Positions 3,490 through 63,654 of a stretch of DNA of 64,000 bases are shown here, piece after piece (the first letter of the stretch is position 1; every line of letters begins with the position of its first letter). The DNA is from Macrostomum lignano (lineage: Eukaryota). The stretch lies in contig NIVC01001356.1 of NCBI GenBank assembly GCA_002269645.1, positions 1 through 64,000 of the forward strand, read 5' to 3'. The position numbers and the translations under genes are program-made. Below the pieces are notes generated by a model. The model did no database searches and was not told where the DNA came from. It was given only the letters and a program-made list of their open reading frames with translations.

Positions 3490-3785
3490 CATACATGCGC
3501 AACCTCCAAAATTCGGTCGGCCGTGCGACTTAGTTTTAACAAAAATGCGACGTAGTTTTTGGCCAAAAATGCGACTTACATGTAAAAAACCCTAGAGCAA
3601 AATTAACGCAACTTTGGGTAAACGGCAGGAGTAACTATGACTGTCCTATTAAGGCAAAATGCCTCGTCAGCTACTTAGTACTACTACTTGGGTATTTTTT
3701 GGGTTGGCATTTTCGCGATTTCCTTGGTTGGCCACCAAATCAGTCGGCCAGATTGGCCGACTCGGCCGACTGTTGCGTATGTATG
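3490..3785 (+). mobile_element. ~296 bp TIR-bounded non-autonomous element with a 28S rRNA-derived core (copy 1), embedded in (TATC)n
   Basis: 5' end CATACATGCGCAAC versus reverse complement of 3' end CATACATACGCAAC. 3' hairpin GTCGGCCA-GAT-TGGCCGAC. Core 3616-3679 resembles 28S GGGTAAACGGCGGGAGTAACTATGACTCTCTTAAGGTAGCCAAATGCCTCGTCATCTAATTAGT. Homologous copies at 58592 and 61528. Confidence 0.7.
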
Positions 3786-4930
<1,145 letters not shown>

Positions 4931-5036
4931 TCTATCCAATACAGTCCCTCTACTAAACTATTCAGTAGTAAGATAAGAGTTGTGTAGTTAAAAAAATCCT
5001 CAACGATAACCCAACCCGCCCTCCAATTTAAACCAG

Positions 5037-10679: not shown

Positions 10680-10749
10680 TGTGTGTCTGTGTCTGTCTGT
10701 CTGTCTGTCTGTGTGTCAGTCTGTCTGTCTGTCTGTCTGTCTGTCTGTG

Positions 10750-10820
<71 letters not shown>

Positions 10821-10821
10821 G

Positions 10822-10900
<79 letters not shown>

Positions 10901-10927
10901 ATGTCTGTTTGTCTGTCTGTCTGTCTA

Positions 10928-11004
<77 letters not shown>

Positions 11005-11013
11005 GTGTCTGTG

Positions 11014-11068
<55 letters not shown>

Positions 11069-11077
11069 GTGTCTGTG

Positions 11078-11120
<43 letters not shown>

Positions 11121-11181
11121 GTGTCTGTGTGTGTGTCTGTCTGTCTGCCTGTGTGTCTGTCTGTCTGTGTGTCTGTCTGTG

Positions 11182-11224
<43 letters not shown>

Positions 11225-11237
11225 GTGTCTGTCTGTG

Positions 11238-11292
<55 letters not shown>

Positions 11293-11302
11293 GTGTCTGT
11301 CA

Positions 11303-11376
<74 letters not shown>

Positions 11377-11432
11377 GTGTCTGTGTGTGTGTCTGTCTGT
11401 CTGTCTGTGTGTCTGTCTGTCTGTGTGTCTGC
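10680..11432. repeat. (GTCT)n/(GT)n microsatellite
   Basis: Direct reading; source of the SVCL and QTDR ORFs. Confidence 0.95.
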
Positions 11433-24501: not shown

Positions 24502-30103
<5,602 letters not shown>

Positions 30104-31254: not shown

Positions 31255-32560
31255 TACATTTGTCCTGTCAATGTCCTCTCTGTGTCCTGCCAATGTCCTC
31301 CCTGTGTCCTGCCAATGTCTTCCCTGTGTCCTTCCAATGTCCTCCAGCTGTGTCCTTCCAATGTCCTCCCTGTGTCCTTCCAATGTCCTTCTGTGTCCTT
31401 CCAAAGTCCTCCCTGTGTCCTTCCAATGTCCTCCTTGTGCCCTTCCAATGTCCTCTCTGTGCCCTTCCAATGTCCTCTCTGTGTCCTTCCAATGTCCTCT
31501 CTGTGTCCTTCCAATGTCCTCCCTGTGTCCTGCCAATGTCCTCCCTGTGTCCTTCCAATGTCCTTCTGTGTCCTTCCAAAGTCCTCTCTGTGTCCTTCCA
31601 ATATCCTCCCTGTGTCCTGCCAATGTCCTCCAGCTGTGTCCTGCCAATGTCCTCCCTGTGTCCTTCCAATATCCTCCCTGTGTCCTTCCAATATCCTCCC
31701 TGTGTCCTGCCAATGTCCTCCCTGTGTCCTTCCAATGTCCTCCCTGTGTCCTTCCAATATCCTCCCTGTGTCCAGCCAATGTCCTCCCTGTGTCCTGCCA
31801 ATGTCCTCCCTGTGTCCTTCCAATGTCCTCCCTGTGTCCTGCCAATATCCTCCCTGTGTCCTGCCAATATCCTCCGTGTCCTGCCAATGTCCTCCAGCTG
31901 TGTCCTGCCAATGTCCTCCCTGTGTCCTACCAATTTCCTCCCTGTGTCCTTCCAATGTCCTTCTGTGTCCTTCCAAAGTCCTCCCTGTGTCCTTCCAATG
32001 TCCTCCTTGTGTCCTTCCAATGTCCTCTCTGTGTCCTTCCAATGTCCTCCCTGTGTCCTTCCAATATCCTCCCTGTGTCCTTCCAATATCCTCCCTGTGT
32101 CCTTCCAATATCCTCCCTGTGTCCTGCCAATGTCATCCAGCTGTGTCCTGCCAATGTCCTCCCTGTGTCCTACCAATTTCCTCCCTGTGTCCTTCCAATG
32201 TCCTTCTGTGTCCTTCCAAAGTCCTCCCTGTGTCCTTCCAATGTCCTCCTTGTGTCCTTCCAATGTCCTCTCTGTGTCCTTCCAATGTCCTCCCTGTGTC
32301 CTTCCAATATCCTCCCTGTGTCCTTCCAATATCCTCCCTGTGTCCTGCCAATGTCCTCCAGCTGTGTCCTGCCAATGTCCTCCCTGTGTCCTGCCAATGT
32401 CCTCCAGCTGTGTCCTGCCAATGTCCTCCCTGTGTCCTGCCAATGTCATCCCTGTGTCCTGCCAATGTCCTGCCTGTGTCCTTCCAATATCCTCCCTGTG
32501 TCCTTCCAATATCCTCCCTGTGTCCAGCCAATGTCCTCCCTGTGTCCTGCCAGTGCCATA
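31255..32560. repeat. 22 bp minisatellite (GTGTCCTTCCAATGTCCTCCCT) with 19 and 25 bp variants
   Basis: Source of the Cys/Pro-rich pseudo-ORFs in several frames. Confidence 0.93.
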
Positions 32561-33524
32561 CCCGTGTCATTTCTGTGTGCCTTCCAGTGTCATCTTTTAA
32601 GTTATCTGGCATACACGTGTCATTCCTCTCATACCTGTGTCATCCTTACGTAGTTTTGGGAGTTTGTGAACTCCAGTATAATTAAACTAAGTTAATCTAA
32701 TGAAAATCAGAACATAAAAAGAGTCTAATAAACAGTCGAAGTTCTCACGCACTGGCTCTGGGAAGTGAGCTAGAGGACGAGAGGGGAGAGGAGGAAAGGA
32801 GGGGAGTGGAGAAGAGGGGAGCGGAGAGGAGGGGAGAAAGGAGGAGAGGAGGGGAGCGGAGAGGAGGTGGGCGAAGAGGAGAGGAGAGGAGGGGAGAAGA
32901 GAAGAGAGAGGGGAGGAGAGGAGAGGAGAGGAGGGGAGATGAAAGAAAAATGGGAGAAAAATACAACACTAATACACAGGATGAATCCCATTCATGCCAA
33001 AGTATCCTCAATGACTTGATGACGTCAACAATGATGAATCCTGAAGACCCGGTTAGTGACATGTCCCTTTTATCACGGAAATTGGTGAAGACCAAAAAAA
33101 AACAAAAAAACAAGAAAACTTCTCAACTTCTCAAAAATTTTAAGATTTTGCAAACCACAAAAGTTTTGCTGAATAAAAAAAGTGTACAAAAACGCTAAGT
33201 TGATCGTGTAAAATTGTGTATTTTTATAACTTCTACTGGCCTTTATAAATAGAAAAAAGCAAATCATCTATACAACTTCATATTTTTATCAATGTAATGT
33301 ATACATAAAGTTGATGAACCTGTAAACAATAAAATACGCGTTTTCTTCTACTGACAGTAGCAATATAAGATTTTTGAAATAGAAATTTATATGGAAGACA
33401 ATAGATTTTAAAAATATTTATAAAAGAAACTATGCATAACTAAGGAACGTATTCGTATTATTTTTTAGGCCAAATACGGAGAGAGAATGTTGTAAATACT
33501 ACTTTCATATTGCTAACGCGTGAT

Positions 33525-34670
33525 AGATAAGGAGATGGGGTGTTAGATAAGCAGATGGGGTGTTAGATAAGGAGATGGGGTGTTAGATAATCAGATGGGG
33601 TGTTAGATAAGCAGATAGGGTGTTAGATAATCAGATGGGGTGTTAGATAAGCAGATGGGGTGTTAGATAATCAGACGGGGTGTTAGGTAAGCAGATGGGG
33701 TGTTAGATAATCAGACGGGTGTTAGATAATCAGATGGGGTGTTAGATAAGCAGATGGGGTGTTAGATAACCAGACGGGGTGTTAGGTAAGCAGATAAGGG
33801 TGTTAGATAAGCAGATGGGTGTTAGATAATCAGATGGGGTGGTAGATAAGCAGATGGGGTGTTAGATAAGCAGACGGGGTGTTAGGTAAGCAGATGGGGT
33901 GTTAGGTAAGCAGATGGGGTGTTAGATAAGCAGATAAGGGTGTTAGATAAGCAGAAAGGGTGTTAGATAAGCAGATGGGTGTTAGATAATCAGATGGGGT
34001 GGTAGATAAGCAGATGGGGTGTTAGATAAGCAGATGGGGTGTTAGGTAAGCAGATGGGGTGTTAGGTAAGCAGATGGGGTGTTAGGTAAGCAGATGGGGT
34101 GTTAGATAAGCAGACGGGGTGTTAGGTAAGCAGATGGGGTGTTAGGTAAGCAGATGGGGTGTTAGGTAAGCAGATGGGGTGTTAGGTAAGCAGACGGGGT
34201 GTTAGGTAAGCAGATGGGGTGTTAGGTAAGCAGACGGGGTGTTAGGTAAGCAGATGGGGTGTTAGGTAAGCAGATGGGGTGTTAGGTAAGCAGATGGGGT
34301 GTTAGGTAAGCAGACGGGGTGTTAGGTAAGCAGATGGGGTGTTAGGTAAGCAGATGGGGTGTTAGATAATCAGACGGGGTGGTAGGTAAGCAGATGGGGT
34401 GTTAGGTAATCAGACGGGGTGGTAGGTAAGCAGATGGGGTGTTAGGTAAGCAGACGGGGTGTTAGGTAAGCAGATGGGGTGTTAGGTAAGCAGACGGGGT
34501 GTTAGGTAAGCAGATAGGGTGTTAGATAATCAGATGGGGTGGTAGATAAGCAGATGGGGTGTTAGATAAGCAGACGGGGTGTTAGGTAAGCAGATGGGGT
34601 GTTAGGTAAGCAGATGGGGTGTTAGATAGCAGATGGGGTGTTAGATAATCAGATGGGATGTTAGATAATC
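33525..34670. repeat. 20 bp minisatellite (GTTAGRTAAGCAGATGGGGT)
   Basis: More than 50 units. Confidence 0.93.
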
Positions 34671-34726: not shown

Positions 34727-35695
34727 CTAAATATGGTAGTTAGGCTTGTACATCTGATCAAATCGTCCCAGATGCTTAGCAACCAGCTCGTCAATCAGGA
34801 GGCTGTCCGCCTCATCAAAGTATCCACGCCAGTCGCCAACCTCGCCGCGTCGATAAAAACCGGTGCCCCGACCTTCGCCCTGGGCAAACAGGTGGCCCAT
34901 ATCGCTGCCTCGGTCGCGCCTCATCCGGTCAAATCCAACGGCATCGCAGATTCCAGTCAACAGCTCCTCAGTGAGCTCGGAAGCACCTTCCGGCATCAAG
35001 AATCGATCGAGTTTTCGAATGACCTCAGCTGGATTCGCTTTCAACTGCTCGTACTCAACTAGGATGACCCGATCAGCTGGCAGCTCTCCGCTAGCCAGAG
35101 AGGCAAGCAGCATCTCATTGTGCTCAAAATACGAACCACCATCCAAAGTGCCGGGCACAAAGAGACCTTTTAGAAAGGCTTGAAATTTACCACTGTACTT
35201 GTAATCGGCAATCCGAGTGTAGTGATGATACAGCGATACAGCCACATCCTTTGGATTCCTAATTGGGCAGATGATCTTAACGCCATTAGACTGCAAAATC
35301 TGCTTTGGCAGAAGCGGCCAAGGCAGGTGACAATTCAACAGCCTTGGAGACGGTTGCGCATTCAAGACTGGCAGCTCAACAAACTCAAGCATCAGCTTCT
35401 CCTTGTTCACCGGACGCTGATGGCACTGCCGGCTGAGCAGGAAGTGGCAGATCTCGTGCAGCCAATGGGTGCCGCATTTCAGGTAGGCCCAGATCAGCAC
35501 ATCATCTTGGCGAGGCTGGAATTCGCTTGGACAGTGCAGCTTTTCTAATCTGTCTTCGATTCCCGTGAAGTCAACGACATAGTAACCGCGCCACAGGCGG
35601 CATTGAACTTCGTTGGCGTCTGTGTCTTTGCGAGTCACTTTGCCTTCGATCGGGGCGCCAGTTTGCGGGTCTAGATGGGGCGATTTTGTCGCCAT
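34727..35695 (-). CDS. Cytosolic (SULT1/2-like) sulfotransferase, intronless, 322 aa
   Basis: 5'-PSB loop AYLKCGTHW, PRLLNCHLP with the catalytic His, 3'-PB motif RNPKDVAVSLYH, and C-terminal RRGEVGDWRGYF. Confidence 0.95.
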   Translation of the reverse strand: MATKSPHLDPQTGAPIEGKVTRKDTDANEVQCRLWRGYYVVDFTGIEDRLEKLHCPSEFQPRQDDVLIWAYLKCGTHWLHEICHFLLSRQCHQRPVNKEKLMLEFVELPVLNAQPSPRLLNCHLPWPLLPKQILQSNGVKIICPIRNPKDVAVSLYHHYTRIADYKYSGKFQAFLKGLFVPGTLDGGSYFEHNEMLLASLASGELPADRVILVEYEQLKANPAEVIRKLDRFLMPEGASELTEELLTGICDAVGFDRMRRDRGSDMGHLFAQGEGRGTGFYRRGEVGDWRGYFDEADSLLIDELVAKHLGRFDQMYKPNYHI

Positions 35696-43833: not shown

Positions 43834-44880
43834 ATGGACTGCAGTAGGCAATCGAATCTCTGTGCAGCGGCTTTTGGCAGAAGGCCGCACAAGGGCATGT
43901 ACATGTGCAAGGTGGACCTGAGCCAGGCCTACAGTTCCTGCGCCATTCACCCAAGTGACCACTGCCTCACCGGCCTGAAGTTCACGGTTGAAGGCGATGT
44001 TGAGCCGACCTACATGGTGGACGCCCGGCTGCCGTTTGGTGCAGCAGCGGCATCTGTCAGTGCAGCTTCTTTCAGATTAGCAATGCCATTCGGTTCATGA
44101 TGCTGAAGCGCAAGTTTTACAACTTCGAGGTCTACATGGACGATTTCGGCTTCGCGGGGTCGCTGACTGATTGCTGGCTTTTCTACACCGAGCTGACGCA
44201 GCTGGTGCAGAGGCTGCATGGGCCTGACTGTCTTGAAGAAGTGCGTGCAGCCGACTCAAGAAATGTGCTTCCTGGGCATCCATCCAGTTCAATACTCTGT
44301 CAGGACTCATGAGCTTGCCAGGATCCAAAGTCGAGAAGAGCTGCAGGTCAGCCTTGATCAGTGCTGTGCGATGCGGCAGATCTCCAACAAGCATGCATGA
44401 GCTGCAGAAAGCTGCAGATGGGCAAGCTCAACTGGGCCTGCCAGGTGATTGTCAACGGCCGGCCTTTCTTGCGCAACCTGATCGACTGCGTCAGCAACAA
44501 AGGATCGGCTGTTGGTAGATAACCAGTTAAAGAGCATCCTTGTCTAGTGGAAGCTGTGGCCTTGCGGCAGTAGCGAGGTCGTGAGATTTGGCCCACGTCC
44601 AAAAGACCGGTTGCCATGGAGACGGACGCCTGCCTTGTAGGAGCGGCAGCTATTTTGCGTGACCCGGCCGGCTTTGACTGGTGCTACCTGAAATGGGATG
44701 TCGATGCTGGTATGGCGTCTTCAGCGAGTGCTGCATCAACTACAAGGAGGCTGCTGCAGTCCTGCTGGCCTTGCTGCTCTGGCGCCATCAGCTGCGCAAC
44801 TGCCAGGTCGCCGTCTACTGCGACGACGCCGCTGCCTGCGCGATAATCAACAAGGGTCTTCCACGGAGTCCCGGTTGCTG
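43834..44880 (+). pseudogene. Degraded DIRS/Ngaro-type (tyrosine-recombinase retrotransposon) RT-RNase H fragment
   Basis: Frameshifted pieces: KVDLSQAY, HPSD, LPFG, YMDD, QPTQEMCFLG; RNase H TDACLVG, INYKEAAAV.LALLLW, CDD...IINKG. No recombinase ORF seen. Confidence 0.82.
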
Positions 44881-45539
44881 CAGCTGCTGCATACAACCGT
44901 TGCTTAAACGGTTGCAGTTGCTTATTTTGCGGGTTAACTTTTCTCTCCAGTGGGCCGTTTTAGAGTTTTTTGCATTTGTTGAATAGAAAAGCTGTGGTAT
45001 CAAATTCCCGTTTTTGTTATTTCATCGTTAAATTTTATTTTTACTACGCATTTTGACACCTGGTACAAATCAAGGTACCAAACATGTAAAATTTTAGATC
45101 AATTCTTTATCGAAACTCGACATCCAACTGTTCCCCGGACCTGACTCAACTCGATCGCTTCGATCGTAACTGTAAACTGTAGTAATGGAGCTTTTGTCTA
45201 TAGCAAGGGTGACAAAGCGGCATTTAATTTGGTCCAACAAGCATCAATTTTTGGTCCAAACGCGTGAGCCATTGGACAAATTTGTAGTGATCCGCTAATT
45301 GGTGTTAGGCGTCGCACTTTGTCAGCAGTCGCCCTTGCCCTCGCCCTCGCCCTGGGTTGCTGTCTGCCGCTGGTCAGCTTCCTGCCTCCCTCCTTTTGTC
45401 TGTCTGTTGCTGCTCCCTTCCCTCGTTTTGCCCGTTTTGCCCCTTGTTTCTCAGCCCTCAGCTTCTCTGCTGTGGGCTGTCTCTGTTTCGCTCGGTCTTT
45501 GTTTCCCCTGTCATGTGAGCGAGTCACATGACAGATCCT

Positions 45540-49678: not shown

Positions 49679-52600
49679 ATGAAATCAACCGCGAGCAGCA
49701 GCTCCGGGGCATCAGAGAGACCCCGCTCAGCCGTGCGTTAGTTCTGTGGCTACACGACCGCCCACGGCCTGGGCCGCTTCTCCGAGCAGTCTACCTTTTT
49801 CGGCAGGCTCATCTGGGTTTCTTTTCTGCTGAGCACCTACGGCGGCTTTGTCTATCACCTGTACACCCTGTTCGACAGGTTTGCCCAGGCTCCTGTGCTC
49901 ACCACAATGACCGTGTCCTCGCTGCCGTTCCAGTTCCCGGATGTGTACATCTGCCCGACGCAGGCGAACACCATGAGCAAGGCCATTACGTCTCTGACCG
50001 ATTATGGAGTTACCAACGTGGAGTTTCTTACCAAGAGAACCATCGACGAGAAGATTGGCTTTTACGATTTTGACCTTAAAAGCAGTGGCTTCAACCAGAT
50101 GACGTGGGCACTGCTGAGCGTCCTGGAAAGCACGGAGGAGTCACTAATGGCGAAGTTTCAGTTTCCAGCACGTGGTGAGCACTCTGCTATTTGAAGATAC
50201 TTTGTCAGTGCAGCATTCTATATATCAGAGCTCTTATCTGATAAGATCCCTATTCAATATAGAGAAGTTGAATTGCTTTAGGCTTTGAGCAGATCGGGCT
50301 GCATCAAATGCTTTCCTTAAAAAATTGTTAGAGAACCAATCCGAGTGTCGGACAACGCTCTCAGGCGAGGAATACTCTGGCAACGTGAGTTCAGCGGTTG
50401 TCTACGGATTTGCCACCATGACAGTCACGTCCGTGAACACCTCGGCATTCGAGCCCAGTCCGTATAGAGCGCTTAGGTCGTGCATACCATGGAATGATGC
50501 AGCTCGGATGCTGCATAGTACAAGCGCCAGCCTAGCCAACAGGCTGCTAACACTCAACTTTTCCGACGACGAGTCCCGCTGTCGCTCGCCGCCCGGACTG
50601 CCGCTGTCTGAGCTTCTGCCGTTTGCATCTCGTGAGTCAAAGAAAATTCAGAGATGGGAAAGCTCTAACAAAAAATAAAGCATCGCGCGTTGCTGATTTT
50701 CCAGGACCAACGTTACGGCTTATCGGCTGCTTCCCAAAAAAGACTGTGGATGCAATATTTCCTGTCTGCTCAGAGCTTCAAATCATCACTTATGAATCCT
50801 GCGCCGAATGCTGCGCCAGACTCAATTTCCCGTACGTGGCCCTCCAGCCCCTGTCGTGCCGATGCGGCTTCAGCATCAGCGGCATCAGGAATAGGTCCGA
50901 CACGTGCGACAGTTATTGCAAGAACGATGGCACAAGAGTTTGCGGCTCAGCTACTAGCGCTACGGTTCTACAGATTCGGGACAATGGTGAGTGAATCATT
51001 CAATCATGTAGGCCCGAGTTCGGAGAGCATCAGGAGGCATTTTAACCAACAGCTCAGATCCTATAGATCGTCTGTATTCGTCTGTATTCGTCTAGTTTCT
51101 TATTTCATGTTTTTAGCATCAAAGGCGCTGCACATAGGAAACTTCAGCCAGTTGACACCGCAGGCGTACGGGCCCTACTGCTTCTTTAGAGATGAGATTG
51201 GCAAGCTGAATGCCGGCTTCTGTGAAATCCCCTTTTGCCGAATTTGTAAGTCCAACCCGCCGCAGTGATGAACTTCATCGCCAAGATCTCGAGAAAATTA
51301 GCTTCTAGGCTCAAACTGCTCACTTTTCAGCCAACTCGAAGACCTACGACTGCGCCGTGAGCTCATCTGACAAGCATGTAGAGCAGCTGCAGCTCTCTCG
51401 GTACACGGGACGGACGAACGTCACCGCCTCCGGCAGACGATGCATGCCTTGGAGTAAATTGCCGAGAATCGAGGAGCTGGTTAAAACGCGCAGTCAGTAC
51501 CGCCTGTTCACTTGAAGCTCTCACAGTCTAGAAAAAATGCATTCTCAACTTGAATTCCTACCTTCATGCAGTATTCGCCCTGGCTGAGGCTTTTAAAAAT
51601 ATCTACATCCGAGTTCCCGACGAAATCGAGAACAGCGAGGACAATTTCTGCCGCTCGGCGAGCATTGTGGTCGACTCTGTCCCATTTTGGGACGAAACTA
51701 TGATAATGTGAGTTCAAAACTGAGTTAGTGACAAATCTTTGTACTAGTTCCAATCTTTTCTTCCATCTTAGGCGACGCAGCGTCGTTAGCTCAAGCGTGC
51801 CAATTTGCATCCCAGAAGACTTTCTCGTCGGGTTTGTGACACCGATGATCTTTGGTTTCGTCACATTTTTTGAATTGGCGGTAGAGACCTGCGATATACC
51901 GAAGTGCTGTGAGTTTTGAGCCTTTTAGAGAAGCTAAAATTAGGACAGGCTATATTGACTGTTCGAATTTAACCTGCATTTTAGACACCACGGCCCCCAG
52001 CGTGACTCGCGCTATCAGCGACTCGGTCGGCAGCCACCTGCTGGCTCGCCAATTCGGCAGCGACCTCGGCGTCAGCCTCGCTGAGTGCAGCTTTGCTGGT
52101 CAGAAATGCACCAAGGAGGACTTTGTGAACTTCGCCCACCCGCAGCTGGGCATGTGCCACCAGTTTCTCAAGCAGCGCTTCACCGCCAACATGAGCAGCA
52201 CGCAGCTGGCAGAGAGCCAGCTGTCAGTCAAGTACTTCACGGACTCGACAGACGCGAAGGGACAGACGTTGTCAAATATTGACAAGCTGACGCGGGTGGT
52301 GCGAGGAGGCCGCAATGCTGATGCCAGACAGACGGCATTCAAGGTGAGTCTTTGACGGCTGCTTACACTGACACTGAACAGTGCTCACTCTCATACTGAA
52401 CAGTGCTCACTCTCACACTGAACAATGCTCACTCTCACACTGAACAGTGCTCACTCTCATACTGAACAATGCTCACTCTCACACTGAACAGTGCTCACTC
52501 TCATACTGAACAGTGCTCACTCTCACACTAAACAGTGCTCACTCTCATCTGAACAGTGCTCACTCTCACACTGAACAGCTGAACAGTGCTCACTCTCATA

Positions 52601-54216
52601 CTGAACAATGCTCACTCTCACACTGAACAGTGCTCACTCTCATACTGAACAGTGCTCACTCTCACACTAAACAGTGCTCACTCTCATCTGAACAGTGCTC
52701 ACTCTCACACTGAACAGCTGAACAGTGCTCACTCTCATACTGAACAGTGCTCACTCTCACACTGAACAATGCTCACTCTCACACTGAACAATCACCTGAG
52801 CCTCCATTGCGAACTTGAAGGCCGTCATCGTACCGGAGGGATCCTTCCCATGGGCTTCAAAGAGCATCGACGTGGCCACGGCTCAGCGCATGGACGTGCA
52901 GCTTAGCTTGAACAAGTACTCGAAACTGTCCAGCGCATCCAGGCCCTGCGCGGAGACCACAGAACCGGTCACATATCGACTGCCGTCCTGGAACATGCCA
53001 CCATCGAATGAAAATTTCAAGTACTAATCTGTATCCTGCTTTGGGGAATTAACCTGTGCTAACTTGTGCTAATATCGTTATTACGCTATGAATTCATTTA
53101 CGTCGTACTAATACTAACCTTGGCTCCAGAATTGATTGGGCCGCAAAAAGGATCATTTCAACCAACGGCTGGACACGGAAACTGTCGATGCTGCGCGAGA
53201 CGCTGCTGAACAACAGCGGCCCAAGGTTAGTAGTGCCAGCAGGTGAAGTGCTCCTGAAGTTATTGTTAACTGCGGAAACTGTCACAACAAACGAAAAGTA
53301 CTTCGCAATTTCAGCATCCTGACCGATGCGGGCCGCCTGTTTGACATCCCCGATCGAGACGACTGTGTCAACACCTACGTCGTGCAGGCCTTCATCGACA
53401 ACTGCGGATGTCTGCCGTCGATTCTCCCTATCAAAGACGAGCTGCTCGCCAATTTCAGTTACTGCTTCAACATCAAAGATGCTGATAACATTTCTGACGA
53501 CACCGAGAGGTGCTACATTGATCAAATGTCCCGGATTACACAATATCAATATGAGGCTACAAAACTCTGCAAGCCGCTGTGCAGCACCTTCGAATACACC
53601 AGCCGCTTCATCCCCTACGTCTGGCCGAACCTGCATTTCATGCAGTCGTTCGAGTTCCTGAGGCAGCTGGCTTCCGACTTCGGTTACCGGCACAACATCA
53701 GCCGGCTGAGGGGTGTCTCCAGCCTGTACTATGCATATCTGAGAGCTCAGAGACTCGCAGACACGCCAGTTAGCAAAATCAGCAGCGCCGAGTCTCAGAG
53801 CTTTGATGTGGAGCTGACGGCGCTGGAAAACCGGCTGGCTCAGCTAACCGTCCAGGCTGAGCGGCCATTCGGCCAGGAGGTCTCGGAGGAGCCGGCCTAC
53901 CCCGCCAAGAACCTCCTGGCCGACATTGGAGGTAAGAAATCATTTTGAGTGGTTTTGGCATCGGCAGCGCGAATTCCGTCAGTTTCAATCGGATTGCTTT
54001 TCAGGCGCCCTGGGTCTCTGGTCCGGCATCTCCATTCTCACTGTCTGCGAGTTGCTGGAGCTCTTCATCTACCTGGGGCAGGAGCTGGTCCTGAGGATGC
54101 GGCGACAGCCCTCCAAGAGGCAGCCAGGAGACAACAACGAGCCTGACTTACCGTCTAAGGTAGAGATGGAGTCGGAGATGAACGCGGCTGAGAATGAAAG
54201 AGTAACTCATTTTTGA
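49679..54216 (+). CDS. DEG/ENaC (ASIC-like) channel subunit with kringle-WSC-kringle insertions, 12 exons, ~1041 codons, in-frame TAG at codon 21
   Basis: Exons 49679-50174, 50332-50631, 50705-50986, 51117-51245, 51331-51492, 51572-51707, 51772-51908, 51985-52343, 52821-53020, 53130-53225, 53315-53931, 54005-54216; all GT-AG with matching phases. Motifs: TTAHG, TM1, FPDVYICP, CSFAGQKC..DF....LGMCHQF, NCGCLP, C.KPLC, TM2 LLADIGGALGLWSGISILTVCELLE. Confidence 0.9.
52373..52792. repeat. 22 bp intronic minisatellite (CTGAACAGTGCTCACTCTCACA)
   Basis: Fills channel intron 8. Confidence 0.92.
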
Positions 54217-58895: not shown

Positions 58896-60205
58896 CGAGG
58901 GTCACTCAGAAAGTCTTTAGCCTGAGTAGGATCCACGAGACGTAGAAGCATGAAATTTGTCTATGGTAAAGACCAACTTTTAAAAGTATCGCAGCAAAAA
59001 TTTCAAACAGAAGCAGCCACTTTTGAGTCCACTGCAGCGAGTTAAAGTCAGTTCAACCCCTGAGTTCTTCAATTCAACAATGAAGCTGGAAAATCGCGAC
59101 TTCAGAGCAATGATGTACCTGCACTTCAAGCAAGGCAAGTCGCCGGCCGAATCGTATCAAACTTTACAGAACGTTTTCACCCATGTATGTCCTTCATACG
59201 CAACCGTCAAAAACTGGTTCGCTGAGTTTCGCCGAGGTCGAGAAAGCCTCGAAGATGAACATCGATCCGGGAGACCCTGTGACGCAGTGACTCCAGAAAA
59301 TATCTGCGCTGTGTCCAGCATGATTGCCGCTGACCGGCGAGTGACCTACCAGCAGATCCAGCAGGAGATCGGTATTGGATCGGGGAGTGTGCACGCCATT
59401 ATGCACGAACACCTTGGAGTGCGGAAGCTGGCTTCCCGGTGGATCCCCCATCAGCTGTCGGACGTGCAGAAGGACACCAGGGTGGCTTGGTGCCGATTCA
59501 TGCTGCAGAAATTCGAATCCGGGACCAGCCGGCGTATCTGGGACATCCTCACGGGCGATGAGACCTGGATTTATCAATACGACCCCGAAAGCAAGCGCCA
59601 GTCAGCCATGTGGACCTTTGGAGACGAGGACAGCCCCACAAAGTTTCGACGCAGCCGGAGTGTCGGCAAGCAGATGGTGGCCTGTTTCTTCATGCGCACT
59701 GGGCATGTGGCTTCCGTTTCACTTGAAGATCGCCAGACAGTCACCGCTGACTGGTACACAACGGTTTGCCTGCCCAAGGTCTTTTCTGCTGTGAGCCAGA
59801 GGCGCCCAAGGTGCGGAATGCGTGGGGTGCTTCTGCACCACGACAACGCCAGCGCGCACACGGCGGCTCAAACTCTGGAGTTTCTGGCTGACTGTGGGGT
59901 CCAGCTGATGACTCACCCTGCTTACAGTCCAGACCTGGCACCGTGCGACTTTTTTCTGTTTCCGAAGTGCAAGGAGATTCTGAAGGGCCAGGTTTTTTCT
60001 TCACCGGAAGAAGCTGTAAATGAGTTCAAAAACATCATCGAGGAGCTCCGGGATGAGGATTGGCGGCATTGCTTCGACAGCTGGTTTCACAGGATGCAAG
60101 CCTGTATCAATGCCGGTGGAGAGTATTTTGAGCACTTGTAGTCGTTTTTTAGTTCATTTGTTGCTGTTTTCGTGTTCAGGCTAAGAACTTTCTGAGTGAC
60201 CCTCG
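58896..60205 (+). mobile_element. Full-length mariner transposon (1310 bp), irritans-like
   Basis: TA duplication at 58894-58895 and 60206-60207; 30 bp TIRs CGAGGGTCACTCAGAAAGTCTTTAGCCTGA, 28/30 identical. The subfamily call rests on the CGAGGG TIR start and is inference. Confidence 0.96.
59080..60141 (+). CDS. Mariner DD34D transposase, intact, 353 aa
   Basis: WIPHQL, TGDETW, HDNA and YSPDLAPCD motifs; 34 residues between the second and third Asp; no stops. Confidence 0.96.
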   Translation: MKLENRDFRAMMYLHFKQGKSPAESYQTLQNVFTHVCPSYATVKNWFAEFRRGRESLEDEHRSGRPCDAVTPENICAVSSMIAADRRVTYQQIQQEIGIGSGSVHAIMHEHLGVRKLASRWIPHQLSDVQKDTRVAWCRFMLQKFESGTSRRIWDILTGDETWIYQYDPESKRQSAMWTFGDEDSPTKFRRSRSVGKQMVACFFMRTGHVASVSLEDRQTVTADWYTTVCLPKVFSAVSQRRPRCGMRGVLLHHDNASAHTAAQTLEFLADCGVQLMTHPAYSPDLAPCDFFLFPKCKEILKGQVFSSPEEAVNEFKNIIEELRDEDWRHCFDSWFHRMQACINAGGEYFEHL

Positions 60206-61702: not shown

Positions 61703-61764
61703 ACTATGTAGCACCTAGATGCAGATGCTAGGACAAATAAAGAACACAATTCTCAATTCCACAG

Positions 61765-63541
61765 GCAAGACAGCGAAGTCGACTTTTGTCAAGCAGCAAT
61801 TTGACCAGCGCCTCTGGCATCGCCTGCGGGCCTCCCTCCGCAACCGCCTGCGACCTACCCCAGCTGCCAAGACAAATTCGTCGACCATGGCTATCAAATT
61901 CTACTACTATTAGTAGTGCAGAAGTTCGCTCTAGATTCATTGAACATTTCTCATCTGGTAGTTCTTCGTCGAAGCTCCAGCACACTGTGGTGCCATCGTC
62001 CTCCGTGATTGCACGCGAAGGCGAGGGCTCGTTCTTTATCAATGCCGGAATGAACCAGTTTAAATCGAGAATATTAGGCGAACCTAATGCTAAATTTGCC
62101 GGTGTAAATCGAGCTGTTAGTGCACAGCGTTGTCTCCGAGTTGGCGGTCGTCAGCACAATGATTTAGAATCGGCTGGTCGTGATGGAAGCCATCACAGCT
62201 TCTTTGAGATGCTCGGAAATTGGTCGTTTGGAGATTATTGGAAACGGGAGGCCTGTAGCATGACTTGGAAGTTTCTTACTGAGGTGAGAATTATTGTCTT
62301 TTTTAAATTATTAGTTCTTACTGCTTTGAGTTGATTCAAAGTTCCAAGGCTCACCAACCCTGATTTCTCAGAATCCTTGATCCTGGGCCTTCCAATCGAG
62401 ATTTCTTAGAATCGTTGATCCAGGGCCCAACAACCCAGATTTCTTAAAATCATTGATCCAGGGCCCACCAACCCAGATTTCTTAAAATCATTGATCCAGG
62501 GTCCTCCAATCCCAATTTATTAAAATATTGGATCCAGGGTCCTCCAAATCTAATTTCTTAAAAGCATTGCTCCAGGGTCCACCAACCCTGATTTCTTAGA
62601 ATCATTATTGATCCAGGGACTACAACCCTGATTTCTTAGAATCGTTGATCCTGGGCTCTCCAATCCAGATTTCTTAGAATCGTTGATCCAGGGCCCACCA
62701 ACCCAGATTTCTTAAAATCATTGATCCAGGGTCCTCCAATTCTAATTTCTTAAAAGCATTGATCCAGGGTCCACCAACCCTGATTTCTTAGAATCATTAT
62801 TGATCCAGGGACTACAACCCTGATTTCTTAGAATCATTATTGATCCAGGGACTACAACCTTGATTTCTTAGAATCGTCGATCCAGGGTTTTCTAATCCTG
62901 TTTTCTAGAATCGTTGATCCAGGGTCCTCCAATCTTGATTTCTTAGAATCGTTTATCCAGGGCCCACCAACCCAGATTTCTTAGAATCGTTTATCTAGGA
63001 CCCACCAACCCAGATTTCTTAGAATCGTTGATCCAGGATCCACAAACCCTGATTTCTTAGAATCTTTAATCCTGGGTCCACCAACCCTGATTTCTTAGAA
63101 TTTACCAAGCAACCCTGATTTTTACCAAGCAAAATGAAATTGCCCCCACAGACGATGAAGCTGCCAGCTTCCCAGCTCTATGTCACCTATTTCGGCGGCT
63201 GCCCGGAGCTCGGTCTGCCTGCAGATTCCGAAACTCGCGACATCTGGTTAAGCCTCGGTGTTAGCGACCAACGCCTGTTGCCATTCGGAATTGAGCACAA
63301 TTTCTGGGAAATGGGCGACACCGGGCCCTGCGGCGTGAGCACCGAAATTCATTTTGATCACGTTGGCGGCCGGTGCGCCAGGTGTTTTGTTAATACTGCG
63401 GTGCCGGACGTTGTGGAACTGTGGAATCTTGTGTTTATGGATCGGTTGAGAACTGCTGCTGGTAAAACGGAATTGAAGAGTCTAGGAATGAGAACTGTTG
63501 ACACTGGTATGGGTTTGGAACGGCTGACGGCTCTTATGCAG
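61765..63541 (+). CDS. AARS2: Alanyl-tRNA synthetase, mitochondrial type, partial (exons 61765-62283 and 63152-63541; continues beyond the window)
   Basis: FINAGMNQFK, QRCLRVGG.HNDL, HHSFFEMLGNWSFGDY, ETRDIWLSLGV, NFWEMGDTGPCG, VELWNLVFM, VDTGMGLERL; Arg/Ser-rich N-terminal extension. Start codon unresolved. Confidence 0.9.
62350..63110. repeat. ~38 bp intronic minisatellite (GATCCAGGGCCCACCAACCCAGATTTCTTAGAATCGTT)
   Basis: Fills the AARS2 intron. Confidence 0.88.
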
Positions 63542-63654
63542 GTGAGGTTGACGTTATTGTTCGGGATTAGCTTTAAGAGTACAGGGTTTATGATCTTTGT
63601 TCCCCATCAGAATTTTAGATTTCTATAATCTGTTTTACTCAGAATCCCAGGTTG

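What the first reader, a model, noticed from the sequence alone, without database searches (positions are those of the whole stretch)
50332..51245. WSC domain inserted inside kringle 1 as a skippable symmetrical exon
Seen: exon 2 has kringle Cys1-3 (EC, SC.PW, RCRSP) and exon 4 has Cys4-6 (GPYC, GFC, IPFC). The 282 bp WSC exon lies between them, flanked by phase-1 introns and divisible by 3. Established: kringle disulfides pair 1-6, 2-4 and 3-5, so the fold must close around the insert; phase 1-1 exons are the classic shuffling unit. Inference: a domain-in-domain insertion, where skipping exon 3 would give a frame-preserving WSC-less isoform and could act as a ligand-specificity switch.
Basis: partly seen in the sequence, partly recalled or inferred. 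Interest (0 to 1): 0.72.

Follow-up and report, generated by a model that had tools for sequence, protein, structure and literature searches.

The report
WSC domain nested inside a kringle
A flatworm sodium-channel gene (DEG/ENaC family) carries, in its outer "finger" region, a kringle domain split by a complete WSC domain on its own exon; the nesting is real and conserved in relatives, but nothing suggests the exon is skipped as a switch.

Summary
Exons at 50332-50631, 50705-50986 and 51117-51245 have GT-AG borders and phase-1 introns, with lengths of 300, 282 and 129 bp. The middle exon is a bona fide WSC domain (Pfam 35-38 bits, cutoff 27.8).

The flanking exons match the N part (positions 1-59) and C part (61-84) of a kringle profile. 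The break falls in the Cys3-Cys4 loop. No shuffle out of 2000 reaches these scores.

The host gene (about 49679-54216, 12 exons) is a DEG/ENaC channel. K1[WSC]-K2 sits in its finger domain.

At least five paralogue groups in Macrostomum lignano share the architecture, down to 33% identity. Two M. lignano loci have the same phase 1-1 WSC exon.

Cysteine counts are conserved at 3 + 10 + 3. All three canonical kringle disulfides join the N half to the C half, so the halves should close around the insert. AlphaFold models were only moderate, and I could not measure closure.

The skippable-switch idea is unsupported:
- No relative lacks the WSC.
- The splice sites are strong and the introns short.
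- Exons 2, 4 and 5 are equally symmetrical.

Verdict: a real, conserved nested domain. It is a new variant of known kinds and moderately interesting.

The parts
49679..49741 (+). Possible original 5' coding end: ATG plus 19 codons, then an in-frame TAG (49739-49741). Relatives have Gln or Glu at that position.
   Evidence: The TAG is followed directly by FCGYTTAHG. ttag|TTC could also act as a spliced-leader acceptor.
49742..50174 (+). Exon 1: HG motif, TM1, beta1 (FPDVYICP) and the first finger helices of a DEG/ENaC channel. It ends in phase 1.
   Evidence: Pfam ASC scores 130.6 bits for the whole model. Residues 1-80 align to FaNaC 75-151.
50332..50631 (+). Exon 2, 300 bp, phase 1-1: N half of kringle 1 (Cys1-Cys3). 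It carries a 27-residue extra loop between the Y.G motif and Cys2.
   Evidence: It matches kringle profile positions 1-16 and 21-59 at 14.2 bits, with 0 of 2000 shuffles reaching that score.
50632..50704 (+). Intron 2, 73 bp, phase 1, GTGAGT...CAG.
50705..50986 (+). Exon 3, 282 bp, phase 1-1: complete WSC domain with 10 cysteines.
   Evidence: Pfam WSC 35.3-37.9 bits against a cutoff of 27.8. The best solved-structure match is yeast Wsc1, 7pz2, E 0.011. There are 10 conserved Cys columns.
50987..51116 (+). Intron 3, 130 bp, phase 1, GTGAGT...TAG.
51117..51245 (+). Exon 4, 129 bp, phase 1-1: C half of kringle 1 (GPYC, GFC, IPFC = Cys4-Cys6).
   Evidence: It matches kringle profile positions 61-84 at 15.9 bits, with 0 of 2000 shuffles reaching that score. 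The only PDB profile hits are plasminogen and ROR1 kringles.
51331..51908 (+). Exons 5-7 (51331-51492, 51572-51707, 51772-51908): kringle 2. It has no inserted domain but long Cys2-Cys3, Cys3-Cys4 and Cys4-Cys5 loops. It is flanked by phase-1 introns, with internal introns of phase 1 and phase 2.
   Evidence: Pfam Kringle 26 bits. My own kringle profile gives 37.4 bits. A PDB profile search hits HGF, prothrombin and tPA kringles at E 1.8e-5.
51985..54216 (+). Exons 8-12 (51985-52343, 52821-53020, 53130-53225, 53315-53931, 54005-54216): the rest of the DEG/ENaC ectodomain, TM2 (GLWSGISILTVCELLE) and the stop codon.
   Evidence: FaNaC, ENaC and ASIC chains match residues 898-997.

Best explanation
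Exons 2-4 encode one kringle whose Cys3-Cys4 loop carries a complete WSC domain. Together with a second, uninterrupted kringle (exons 5-7) it forms a 382-codon block, K1[WSC]-K2. That block is itself flanked by phase-1 introns and lies inside the finger domain of a DEG/ENaC cation channel. The channel belongs to a family found so far only in Macrostomum flatworms.

Shown here: the exon borders and phases, the WSC identity, the colinear kringle match of the two halves, the conserved cysteine counts, and conservation of the architecture and exon structure in distant paralogues.

Inferred: the WSC exon, a class 1-1 module, entered an intron inside the kringle by exon shuffling before the family diversified. 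The kringle closes around the insert through its three N-half-to-C-half disulfides. The first and last strands of the WSC fold are neighbours in one antiparallel sheet, so the domain can sit on a loop.

Inferred function: the WSC is a constitutive part of a composite kringle-WSC binding head placed on the gating-coupled corner of the channel. I expect the head to bind an extracellular protein or glycan and so gate, tune or tether the channel. Specificity would be diversified through paralogues rather than by exon skipping.
For: - Exon borders and phases.
- WSC identity: Pfam 35-38 bits, above the cutoff. The AlphaFold model of the P0002 homologue matches Wsc1 at TM 0.64, probability 1.00, and Kremen1 at probability 0.99.
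- Kringle halves: the profile match comes in three colinear pieces (1-16, 21-60, 61-84) across the intact exon 2-4 protein. It scores 22.2 bits with the WSC in place and 25.7 bits without it. Shuffles reach at most 8.1 bits.
- Multi-kringle proteins of an ostracod align across the exon 4 to exon 5 equivalent as a kringle end followed by the next kringle start, E 3e-13.
- Cysteines are 3 / 10 / 3 / 6 in K1N / WSC / K1C / K2, in conserved columns across members. Canonical kringle pairing is 1-6, 2-4, 3-5, as in Kremen1 (PMC5014086), so each half alone would leave three unpaired cysteines.
- The same order K1N-WSC-K1C-K2 occurs in P0001-P0003 and P0010-P0012; fragments P0014 and P0030 fit it.
- The WSC exon is phase 1-1 in two M. 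lignano loci, 276 bp in L001 and 300 bp in L002.
- Finger location: residues 80-535 replace about 35 residues of FaNaC. The finger helices alpha1-alpha3 form the peptide pocket and move on gating in FaNaC1 (PMC11026163).
- In Kremen1, kringle and WSC form one rigid ligand-binding face (PMC5014086).
- The K1 halves are as conserved as the channel core (46-47% against 51%), whereas WSC and K2 are the variable parts (32%).
Against: - Pfam's Kringle model does not reach its gathering score for either kringle: 14.6 bits for K1 without the WSC and 26 bits for K2, against 34.3.
- A profile of K1 without the WSC finds PDB kringles only at E about 1.
- The AlphaFold models are moderate at best, with pLDDT 52 and 66.5 and pTM 0.40 and 0.59.
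- Foldseek aligned kringles only locally, over 25-27 columns at E 0.3-0.6.
- The model puts two helices between Cys2 and Cys3, which is atypical for kringles.
- This copy has an in-frame TAG 21 codons after the candidate ATG, so it may not be expressed as drawn.
- No functional or expression data were examined.
Confidence: 0.65

Rival explanations
1. One reading: exon 3 is a regulated cassette exon. Skipping it yields a WSC-less channel isoform with a different ligand specificity.
For: Skipping keeps the frame, and the joined halves still score as a kringle at 25.7 bits. Symmetrical 3n exons are well suited to frame-preserving skipping (PMC8001218). Some M. lignano gene models (P0004, P0005, P0009) lack exactly the neighbouring exon-4 equivalent, so exon-level variation or mis-prediction does occur in this family.
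Against: No WSC-less sequence was found among any relatives, in 5.8 billion clustered and 1.84 billion representative proteins. The acceptor tttccag|G and donor |gtgagt are consensus sites, and the flanking introns are 73 and 130 bp. Exons 2, 4 and 5 are equally skippable. The 10 WSC cysteines are conserved across paralogues. No RNA reads could be checked.
Confidence: 0.08
2. The two cysteine-rich flanks are not one kringle. They would be degenerate remnants that fold separately or pack onto the WSC as a new composite fold, with only motif-level resemblance to kringles.
For: Pfam scores are sub-threshold and the PDB profile hits are at E about 1. There is a 27-residue insertion, and helices are predicted in the N half. 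Foldseek found no global kringle match. Profile-profile similarity of K1 to K2 is weak, at probability 9%.
Against: The three-piece profile match is colinear and far above shuffles. All kringle landmark motifs appear in order. The 3 + 3 cysteines are invariant, with an even count in the insert. Exon 4 plus exon 5 aligns like a kringle-to-kringle junction of multi-kringle proteins. Both halves have the better pLDDT values in model 2, 79-91 and 69-84.
Confidence: 0.17
3. This particular copy is a recently disabled pseudogene or carries an assembly error. On that reading, the architecture is real in the family but this locus makes no channel.
For: An in-frame TAG lies at 49739-49741, between the only upstream in-frame ATG and the conserved FCGYTTAHG, at a position where relatives have Gln or Glu.
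Against: The remaining 3063 nt over 12 exons are open, with all splice sites intact and conserved motifs present. The M. lignano spliced leader ends in ATG (PMC8629364). Trans-splicing at ttag|TTC would give ATG-TTC-TGT in frame and bypass the TAG.
Confidence: 0.1

Closest known systems
Kremen1/2 ectodomain (kringle-WSC-CUB)
   Same: It has the same two module types next to each other. In Kremen1, kringle and WSC pack rigidly and together form the DKK1-binding face (PMC5014086). Kremen1 chains are among the top structural matches of the homologue model.
   Different: In Kremen the WSC follows a complete kringle, whereas here it sits inside the kringle's Cys3-Cys4 loop. The host is an ion channel, not a single-pass receptor. 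There is no CUB domain. No specific sequence relationship to the Kremen WSC was detected.
DEG/ENaC channels with elaborated finger domains (FaNaC peptide pocket, ENaC inhibitory tracts, MEC-4 extra cysteine-rich region)
   Same: The channel core is the same: Pfam ASC 130.6 bits, with FaNaC as the best solved relative. The extra sequence lies in the finger alpha1-alpha3 region, which is the divergent, gating-coupled corner (PMC11026163).
   Different: Those fingers are elaborated by family-specific sequence. Here about 380 residues of recognisable mobile extracellular modules (two kringles and a WSC) are inserted. I found no paper that mentions kringle, WSC and degenerin together. The ENaC and MEC-4 comparisons rest on my own knowledge.
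Class 1-1 module exon shuffling (Patthy)
   Same: The WSC exon, each kringle as a whole and the whole K1[WSC]-K2 block are all flanked by phase-1 introns and have lengths of 3n. This is the diagnostic signature described in PMC8001218.
   Different: Shuffled modules normally land between domains. Here one landed inside another small disulfide-bonded module.
Known nested insertions in small disulfide-rich modules: laminin L4 domain inside a laminin-type EGF repeat, and integrin beta PSI / hybrid / beta-I nesting (from my own knowledge, not tested here)
   Same: A globular domain sits on a loop of a small cysteine-rich domain, and long-range disulfides close the host domain around the insert.
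   Different: The folds and hosts differ. I know of no kringle described with an inserted domain.

Membership tests
Kringle domain (Pfam PF00051) | Score at or above Pfam's gathering threshold (34.3 bits) | tested here: not met
   K1 without the WSC scores 14.6 bits, on the C part only. K2 scores 26 bits.
Kringle domain (Pfam PF00051) | Six cysteines with the landmark motifs in order (C..G..Y.G, C..W, CR.P, GP.C, C.IP.C), colinear with a kringle profile | tested here: met
   All motifs are present. A profile from 72 unrelated kringles matches positions 1-16, 21-60 and 61-84 in order. It scores 22.2-25.7 bits, with 0 of 2000 shuffles reaching that. The six cysteines are invariant in the family.
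Kringle domain (Pfam PF00051) | Kringle fold closed by 1-6, 2-4 and 3-5 disulfides | tested here: inconclusive
   The AlphaFold models of homologues are moderate (pLDDT 52 and 66.5) and no coordinates were available. Foldseek gives only local kringle matches. Cysteine parity of 3 + 10 + 3 fits closure.
WSC domain (Pfam PF01822) | Score above the gathering threshold (27.8 bits) over the full model length | tested here: met
   35.3-37.9 bits over profile positions 2-81 of 82, and 31.1 bits in the full protein.
WSC domain (Pfam PF01822) | WSC/PAN-like fold with conserved disulfide cysteines | tested here: met
   The homologue model matches Wsc1 (7pz2) at TM 0.64, probability 1.00, and Kremen1 at probability 0.99. 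There are 10 conserved cysteine columns, the canonical 8 plus 2. The canonical number comes from PMC5014086.
DEG/ENaC channel (Pfam PF00858 ASC) | ASC profile match, HG motif, two transmembrane segments, and a G.S-type motif in TM2 | tested here: met
   ASC scores 130.6 bits. TAHGL, TM1 and GLWSGISILTVCELLE are read directly from the model. FaNaC, ENaC and ASIC chains match.
DEG/ENaC channel (Pfam PF00858 ASC) | Intact open reading frame from a start codon | tested here: inconclusive
   An in-frame TAG follows 20 codons after the ATG at 49679. A spliced-leader ATG could supply the start.
Class 1-1 shuffled module | Domain borders coincide with introns of the same phase (1-1), and exon length is 3n | tested here: met
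   The window exon is 282 bp, the L001 exon 276 bp and the L002 exon 300 bp. All are phase 1-1.
Alternatively spliced cassette exon | Transcripts both with and without the exon | not testable with these tools
   No read or transcript data for this species were available. Indirectly, no WSC-less relative exists in the protein collections searched.
Nested (domain-in-domain) insertion | Host domain sequence continues on both sides of a complete guest domain, and the arrangement is conserved in homologues | tested here: met
   One search shows the host profile break at positions 60/61. Searches show the same order in 7 full members, down to 33% identity.

The most novel reading that the evidence does not exclude
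The kringle-with-WSC head, plus kringle 2, acts as a receptor or tether module that gives this DEG/ENaC family a gating input not known in the superfamily. The input would be binding of, or pulling by, an extracellular macromolecule such as a matrix glycan or a secreted protein, transmitted through the finger to the pore. The fast-evolving WSC surface would set partner specificity in each paralogue.
Probability: 0.2. Interest if true: 0.75.

Novelty: new variant of a known kind. Interest (0 to 1): 0.5.

Why it matters
This would be a clear natural case of one mobile extracellular module inserted by exon shuffling inside another small disulfide-locked module. The genomic footprints are still visible: phase 1-1 exons nested at three levels, with WSC inside kringle, and the kringle block inside the channel finger.

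For ion-channel biology, it puts recognisable protein- and glycan-binding modules on the gating-coupled corner of a DEG/ENaC channel. This occurs in a tractable regeneration model genus. It offers a testable route to new ligands or tethers for this superfamily.

It also shows that domain annotation by standard profiles misses split domains. The public records name these proteins only "WSC domain-containing".

Tried and rejected
I therefore used M. lignano homologue segments plus single window exons as alignment rows.
- AlphaFold run 1 (P0001 segment, 7 rows) was too poor to use, at pLDDT 52. Its Foldseek matches were weak.
- Run 2 was better, but Foldseek, being sequence-order local, cannot align a kringle split by about 100 residues.
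- A PDB profile search with K1 minus the WSC gave only E about 1.
- hhalign of K1 against K2 was weak, at probability 9%, so I make no firm claim that K1 and K2 are tandem duplicates.
- A second alignment-based protein search added only one further sequence to that search's results (P0014, already seen).
- An attempt to identify the species from the neighbouring alanyl-tRNA synthetase exon found no Macrostomum hit; the best match was 57% identical. The window's species is therefore not settled. The closest channel relatives are M. lignano proteins at 52-63% identity.
- A literature search for kringle + WSC + degenerin found no paper with all three terms.
- I considered a Kremen-derived origin for the kringle-WSC pair, but no sequence evidence supports it.
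Full report
**What is at the coordinates**

The window is eukaryotic. On the + strand, three open segments at 50332-50631, 50705-50986 and 51117-51245 are bounded by AG acceptors and by GTGAGT or GTAAGT donors. They read through in one frame with phase-1 junctions. Their lengths are 300, 282 and 129 bp.

Exon 2 holds SEC, RSCIPW and SRCRSP. Exon 4 holds GPYCFF, GFC and IPFC. Exon 3 alone hits Pfam WSC at 37.9 bits (E 2.1e-9, cutoff 27.8) over almost the whole model. Its best solved-structure relative by sequence is the yeast Wsc1 sensor domain.

**The gene around it**

A hand-built model of 12 exons (49742-54216, 3063 nt, all GT-AG, no internal stop) encodes a DEG/ENaC channel. Pfam ASC scores 130.6 bits. 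The model has the TAHGL motif, TM1, FPDVYICP, CSFAGQKC and a TM2 reading GLWSGISILTVCELLE.

The closest solved channels are the FMRFamide-gated channels 7yvb and 8on7. In those alignments, residues 5-80 pair with FaNaC 75-151 and residues 535-578 pair with FaNaC 186-227. About 420 extra residues therefore sit in the finger region.

Exons 2-4 (kringle 1 with the WSC) and exons 5-7 (kringle 2) make up that extra block. The block totals 1146 bp, which is 382 codons, and phase-1 introns flank it on both sides. The nesting therefore has three levels: the channel finger contains K1-K2, and K1 contains the WSC.

**Are the two flanks one kringle?**

Pfam's Kringle model is weak here. It gives 14.6 bits for exon 2 plus exon 4, on the C part only, and 26 bits for kringle 2. 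Both are below the 34.3-bit cutoff.

A profile of kringle 2 from four family members does find HGF, prothrombin and tPA kringles in the PDB, at E 1.8e-5. The same test for kringle 1 without the WSC gives only E about 1, although its only three hits are kringles.

I then built a profile from 72 kringles taken from unrelated multi-kringle proteins that the representative search had returned. Results against that profile:

| Query | Score (bits) | Profile positions matched |
|---|---|---|
| Exon 2 | 14.2 | 1-16 and 21-59 |
| Exon 4 | 15.9 | 61-84 |
| Joined halves | 25.7 | not itemised |
| Intact exon 2-4 protein | 22.2 | 1-16, 21-60, 61-84 (three colinear pieces) |
| Kringle 2 | 37.4 | 8-60 and 67-84 |

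None of 2000 shuffles per query exceeded 8.1 bits. The profile breaks exactly between CR.P.G and GP.C, which is the Cys3-Cys4 loop.

Ostracod multi-kringle proteins also align across the exon 4 to exon 5 equivalent, as the end of one kringle followed by the start of the next.

**Conservation**

All named relatives are Macrostomum lignano proteins. They fall into at least five groups: P0001/P0010, P0002/4/5/9, P0003, P0011/P0014/P0030, and P0012/P0051. Identity to the window protein runs from 63% down to about 33%.

Every member that covers the region has the order K1N-WSC-K1C-K2. Cysteine counts are 3, 10, 3 and 6 in conserved columns.

In two M. lignano genomic loci the WSC is again a single phase 1-1 exon at the same positions. 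It is 276 bp in L001, which encodes P0003. It is 300 bp in L002, which encodes P0011, and a 123-bp phase 1-1 exon for the C half follows it there. The insertion therefore predates the diversification of the family.

No relative outside Macrostomum turned up among 1.84 billion representative proteins. UniProt names these proteins only "WSC domain-containing", and one kringle 2 fragment "Kringle domain-containing".

**Structure**

- Model 1 (P0001, 7-row alignment) was poor, with pLDDT 52.
- Model 2 (P0002 K1N-WSC-K1C, 12 rows) reached pLDDT 66.5 and pTM 0.59. The N half scored 79-91 and the C half 69-84.

For model 2, Foldseek matched the WSC part to Wsc1 (TM 0.64, probability 1.00) and to Kremen1 (probability 0.99). 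It matched the C half locally to the factor XII and tPA kringles, over 25-27 columns at about 2 Å.

The argument for closure is indirect:
- Canonical kringle disulfides are 1-6, 2-4 and 3-5, as in Kremen1 (C32-C114, C55-C95, C84-C109; PMC5014086). All three join the N half to the C half.
- The insert has an even number of cysteines.
- The WSC sheet order is beta1-beta5-beta3-beta4-beta2 (same paper). This places its first and last strands side by side, the geometry needed for a domain borne on a loop.

**The isoform idea**

Skipping exon 3 does keep the frame. But skipping exon 2, 4 or 5 does so too. The symmetry is what exon shuffling leaves behind (PMC8001218) and is not specific evidence for regulation.

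Exon 3 has a pyrimidine-rich CAG acceptor and a GTGAGT donor. GT[G/A]AG and CAG are the most enriched cis-splice motifs reported for M. lignano (PMC8629364). Its flanking introns are 73 and 130 bp.

No WSC-less relative was found. What does vary in public gene models is the small exon for the C half. It is missing from P0004, P0005 and P0009 in a way that corresponds to a precise exon skip. That would leave three unpaired cysteines, so I regard it as more likely a missed exon than a functional form. Read data are needed to settle both points.

**How it most likely works**

This section is inference. In FaNaC1 the finger helices alpha1-alpha3 form the peptide pocket and move on gating, and this corner is the divergent regulatory site across the superfamily (PMC11026163). 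In Kremen1, kringle and WSC form one rigid face that binds DKK1 (PMC5014086).

In plasminogen-type kringles the Cys3-Cys4 loop carries the acidic residues of the lysine-binding site (my own knowledge). The WSC therefore sits on the kringle's usual ligand face.

Across paralogues the K1 halves are as conserved as the channel core (46-47% against 51%). The WSC and K2 are the most variable parts, at about 32%, or 25% for the WSC without its cysteines.

I therefore read K1 as a conserved scaffold that presents a diversifying WSC surface. Together they would form a binding head for an extracellular protein or glycan, one that gates, modulates or tethers the channel. Specificity would vary between paralogues rather than between splice forms.

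**Comparison and novelty**

All the parts are known kinds: DEG/ENaC, kringle, WSC and class 1-1 exon shuffling. Nested insertions in small disulfide-rich modules also have precedents, such as laminin L4 inside an LE repeat and the integrin beta PSI/hybrid/beta-I nesting (my own knowledge).

What I could not find described is a kringle with an inserted domain, or a DEG/ENaC channel carrying kringle and WSC modules. I rate this a new variant of a known kind, of moderate interest.

**Limits**

- The species of the window is not established.
- This copy has an in-frame TAG between the candidate ATG (49679) and the conserved N-terminus. Trans-splicing of the spliced leader, which ends in ATG (PMC8629364), at ttag|TTC (49741/49742) would bypass it. 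This is untested.
- No expression, splicing or functional data were available.

Noticed in passing
window 49679-49745: An ATG at 49679 opens the channel's reading frame, but codon 21 is TAG (49739-49741), directly before the conserved FCGYTTAHG. M. lignano relatives have Gln or Glu there. This could be a nonsense allele or an assembly error. Alternatively, ttag|TTC is a spliced-leader acceptor; the M. lignano leader ends in ATG, which would be in frame.
   Followed up: partly
P0004, P0005, P0009 (M. lignano gene models) compared with P0002: These models lack exactly the C half of kringle 1, the equivalent of window exon 4, with the junction residue expected from a precise phase-1 exon skip. 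That leaves three unpaired cysteines. It is either a missed 123-129 bp exon or a real skipped form.
   Followed up: partly
window 51772-51908 (exon 7): The Cys4-Cys5 loop of kringle 2 is 27 residues instead of about 11. In this copy it is strongly hydrophobic (DFLVGFVTPMIFGFVTFFELAV), almost like a membrane segment. Paralogues are less hydrophobic there.
   Followed up: no
window 52360-52790: A tandem repeat of a 22-bp unit (139-bp higher-order unit, about 19 copies) fills most of the 477-bp intron 8 of the channel gene.
   Followed up: no
window 1-40700, many sites (for example 1321-2898, 3778-4936, 10690-11431, 25059-26486, 31261-32552, 33520-34668): The first 40 kb are unusually dense in long micro- and minisatellite arrays: dozens of arrays of 0.3-1.6 kb with units of 4-90 bp. 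These create many spurious long ORFs.
   Followed up: no
window 59023-60141 (+): An intact 372-aa ORF resembles a mariner/Tc1-type transposase with an N-terminal helix-turn-helix region. I identified it by eye only.
   Followed up: no
window 61741-63625 (+): Exons of an alanyl-tRNA synthetase gene (FFEMLGNWSFGDYWK motif). The best database matches are only 57% identical, AARS2-like, and none is from Macrostomum.
   Followed up: partly
window 34727-35695 (-) and 26985-28043 (+): There is a 322-aa intronless ORF with sulfotransferase-like motifs. There is also an exon with a RhoGAP-like motif (LYLRELPE) interrupted by an AGAC repeat. I identified both by eye only.
   Followed up: no
window 44200-45000 (+): Overlapping open frames here resemble the RNase H / polymerase region of a retroelement. 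I did not examine them.
   Followed up: no
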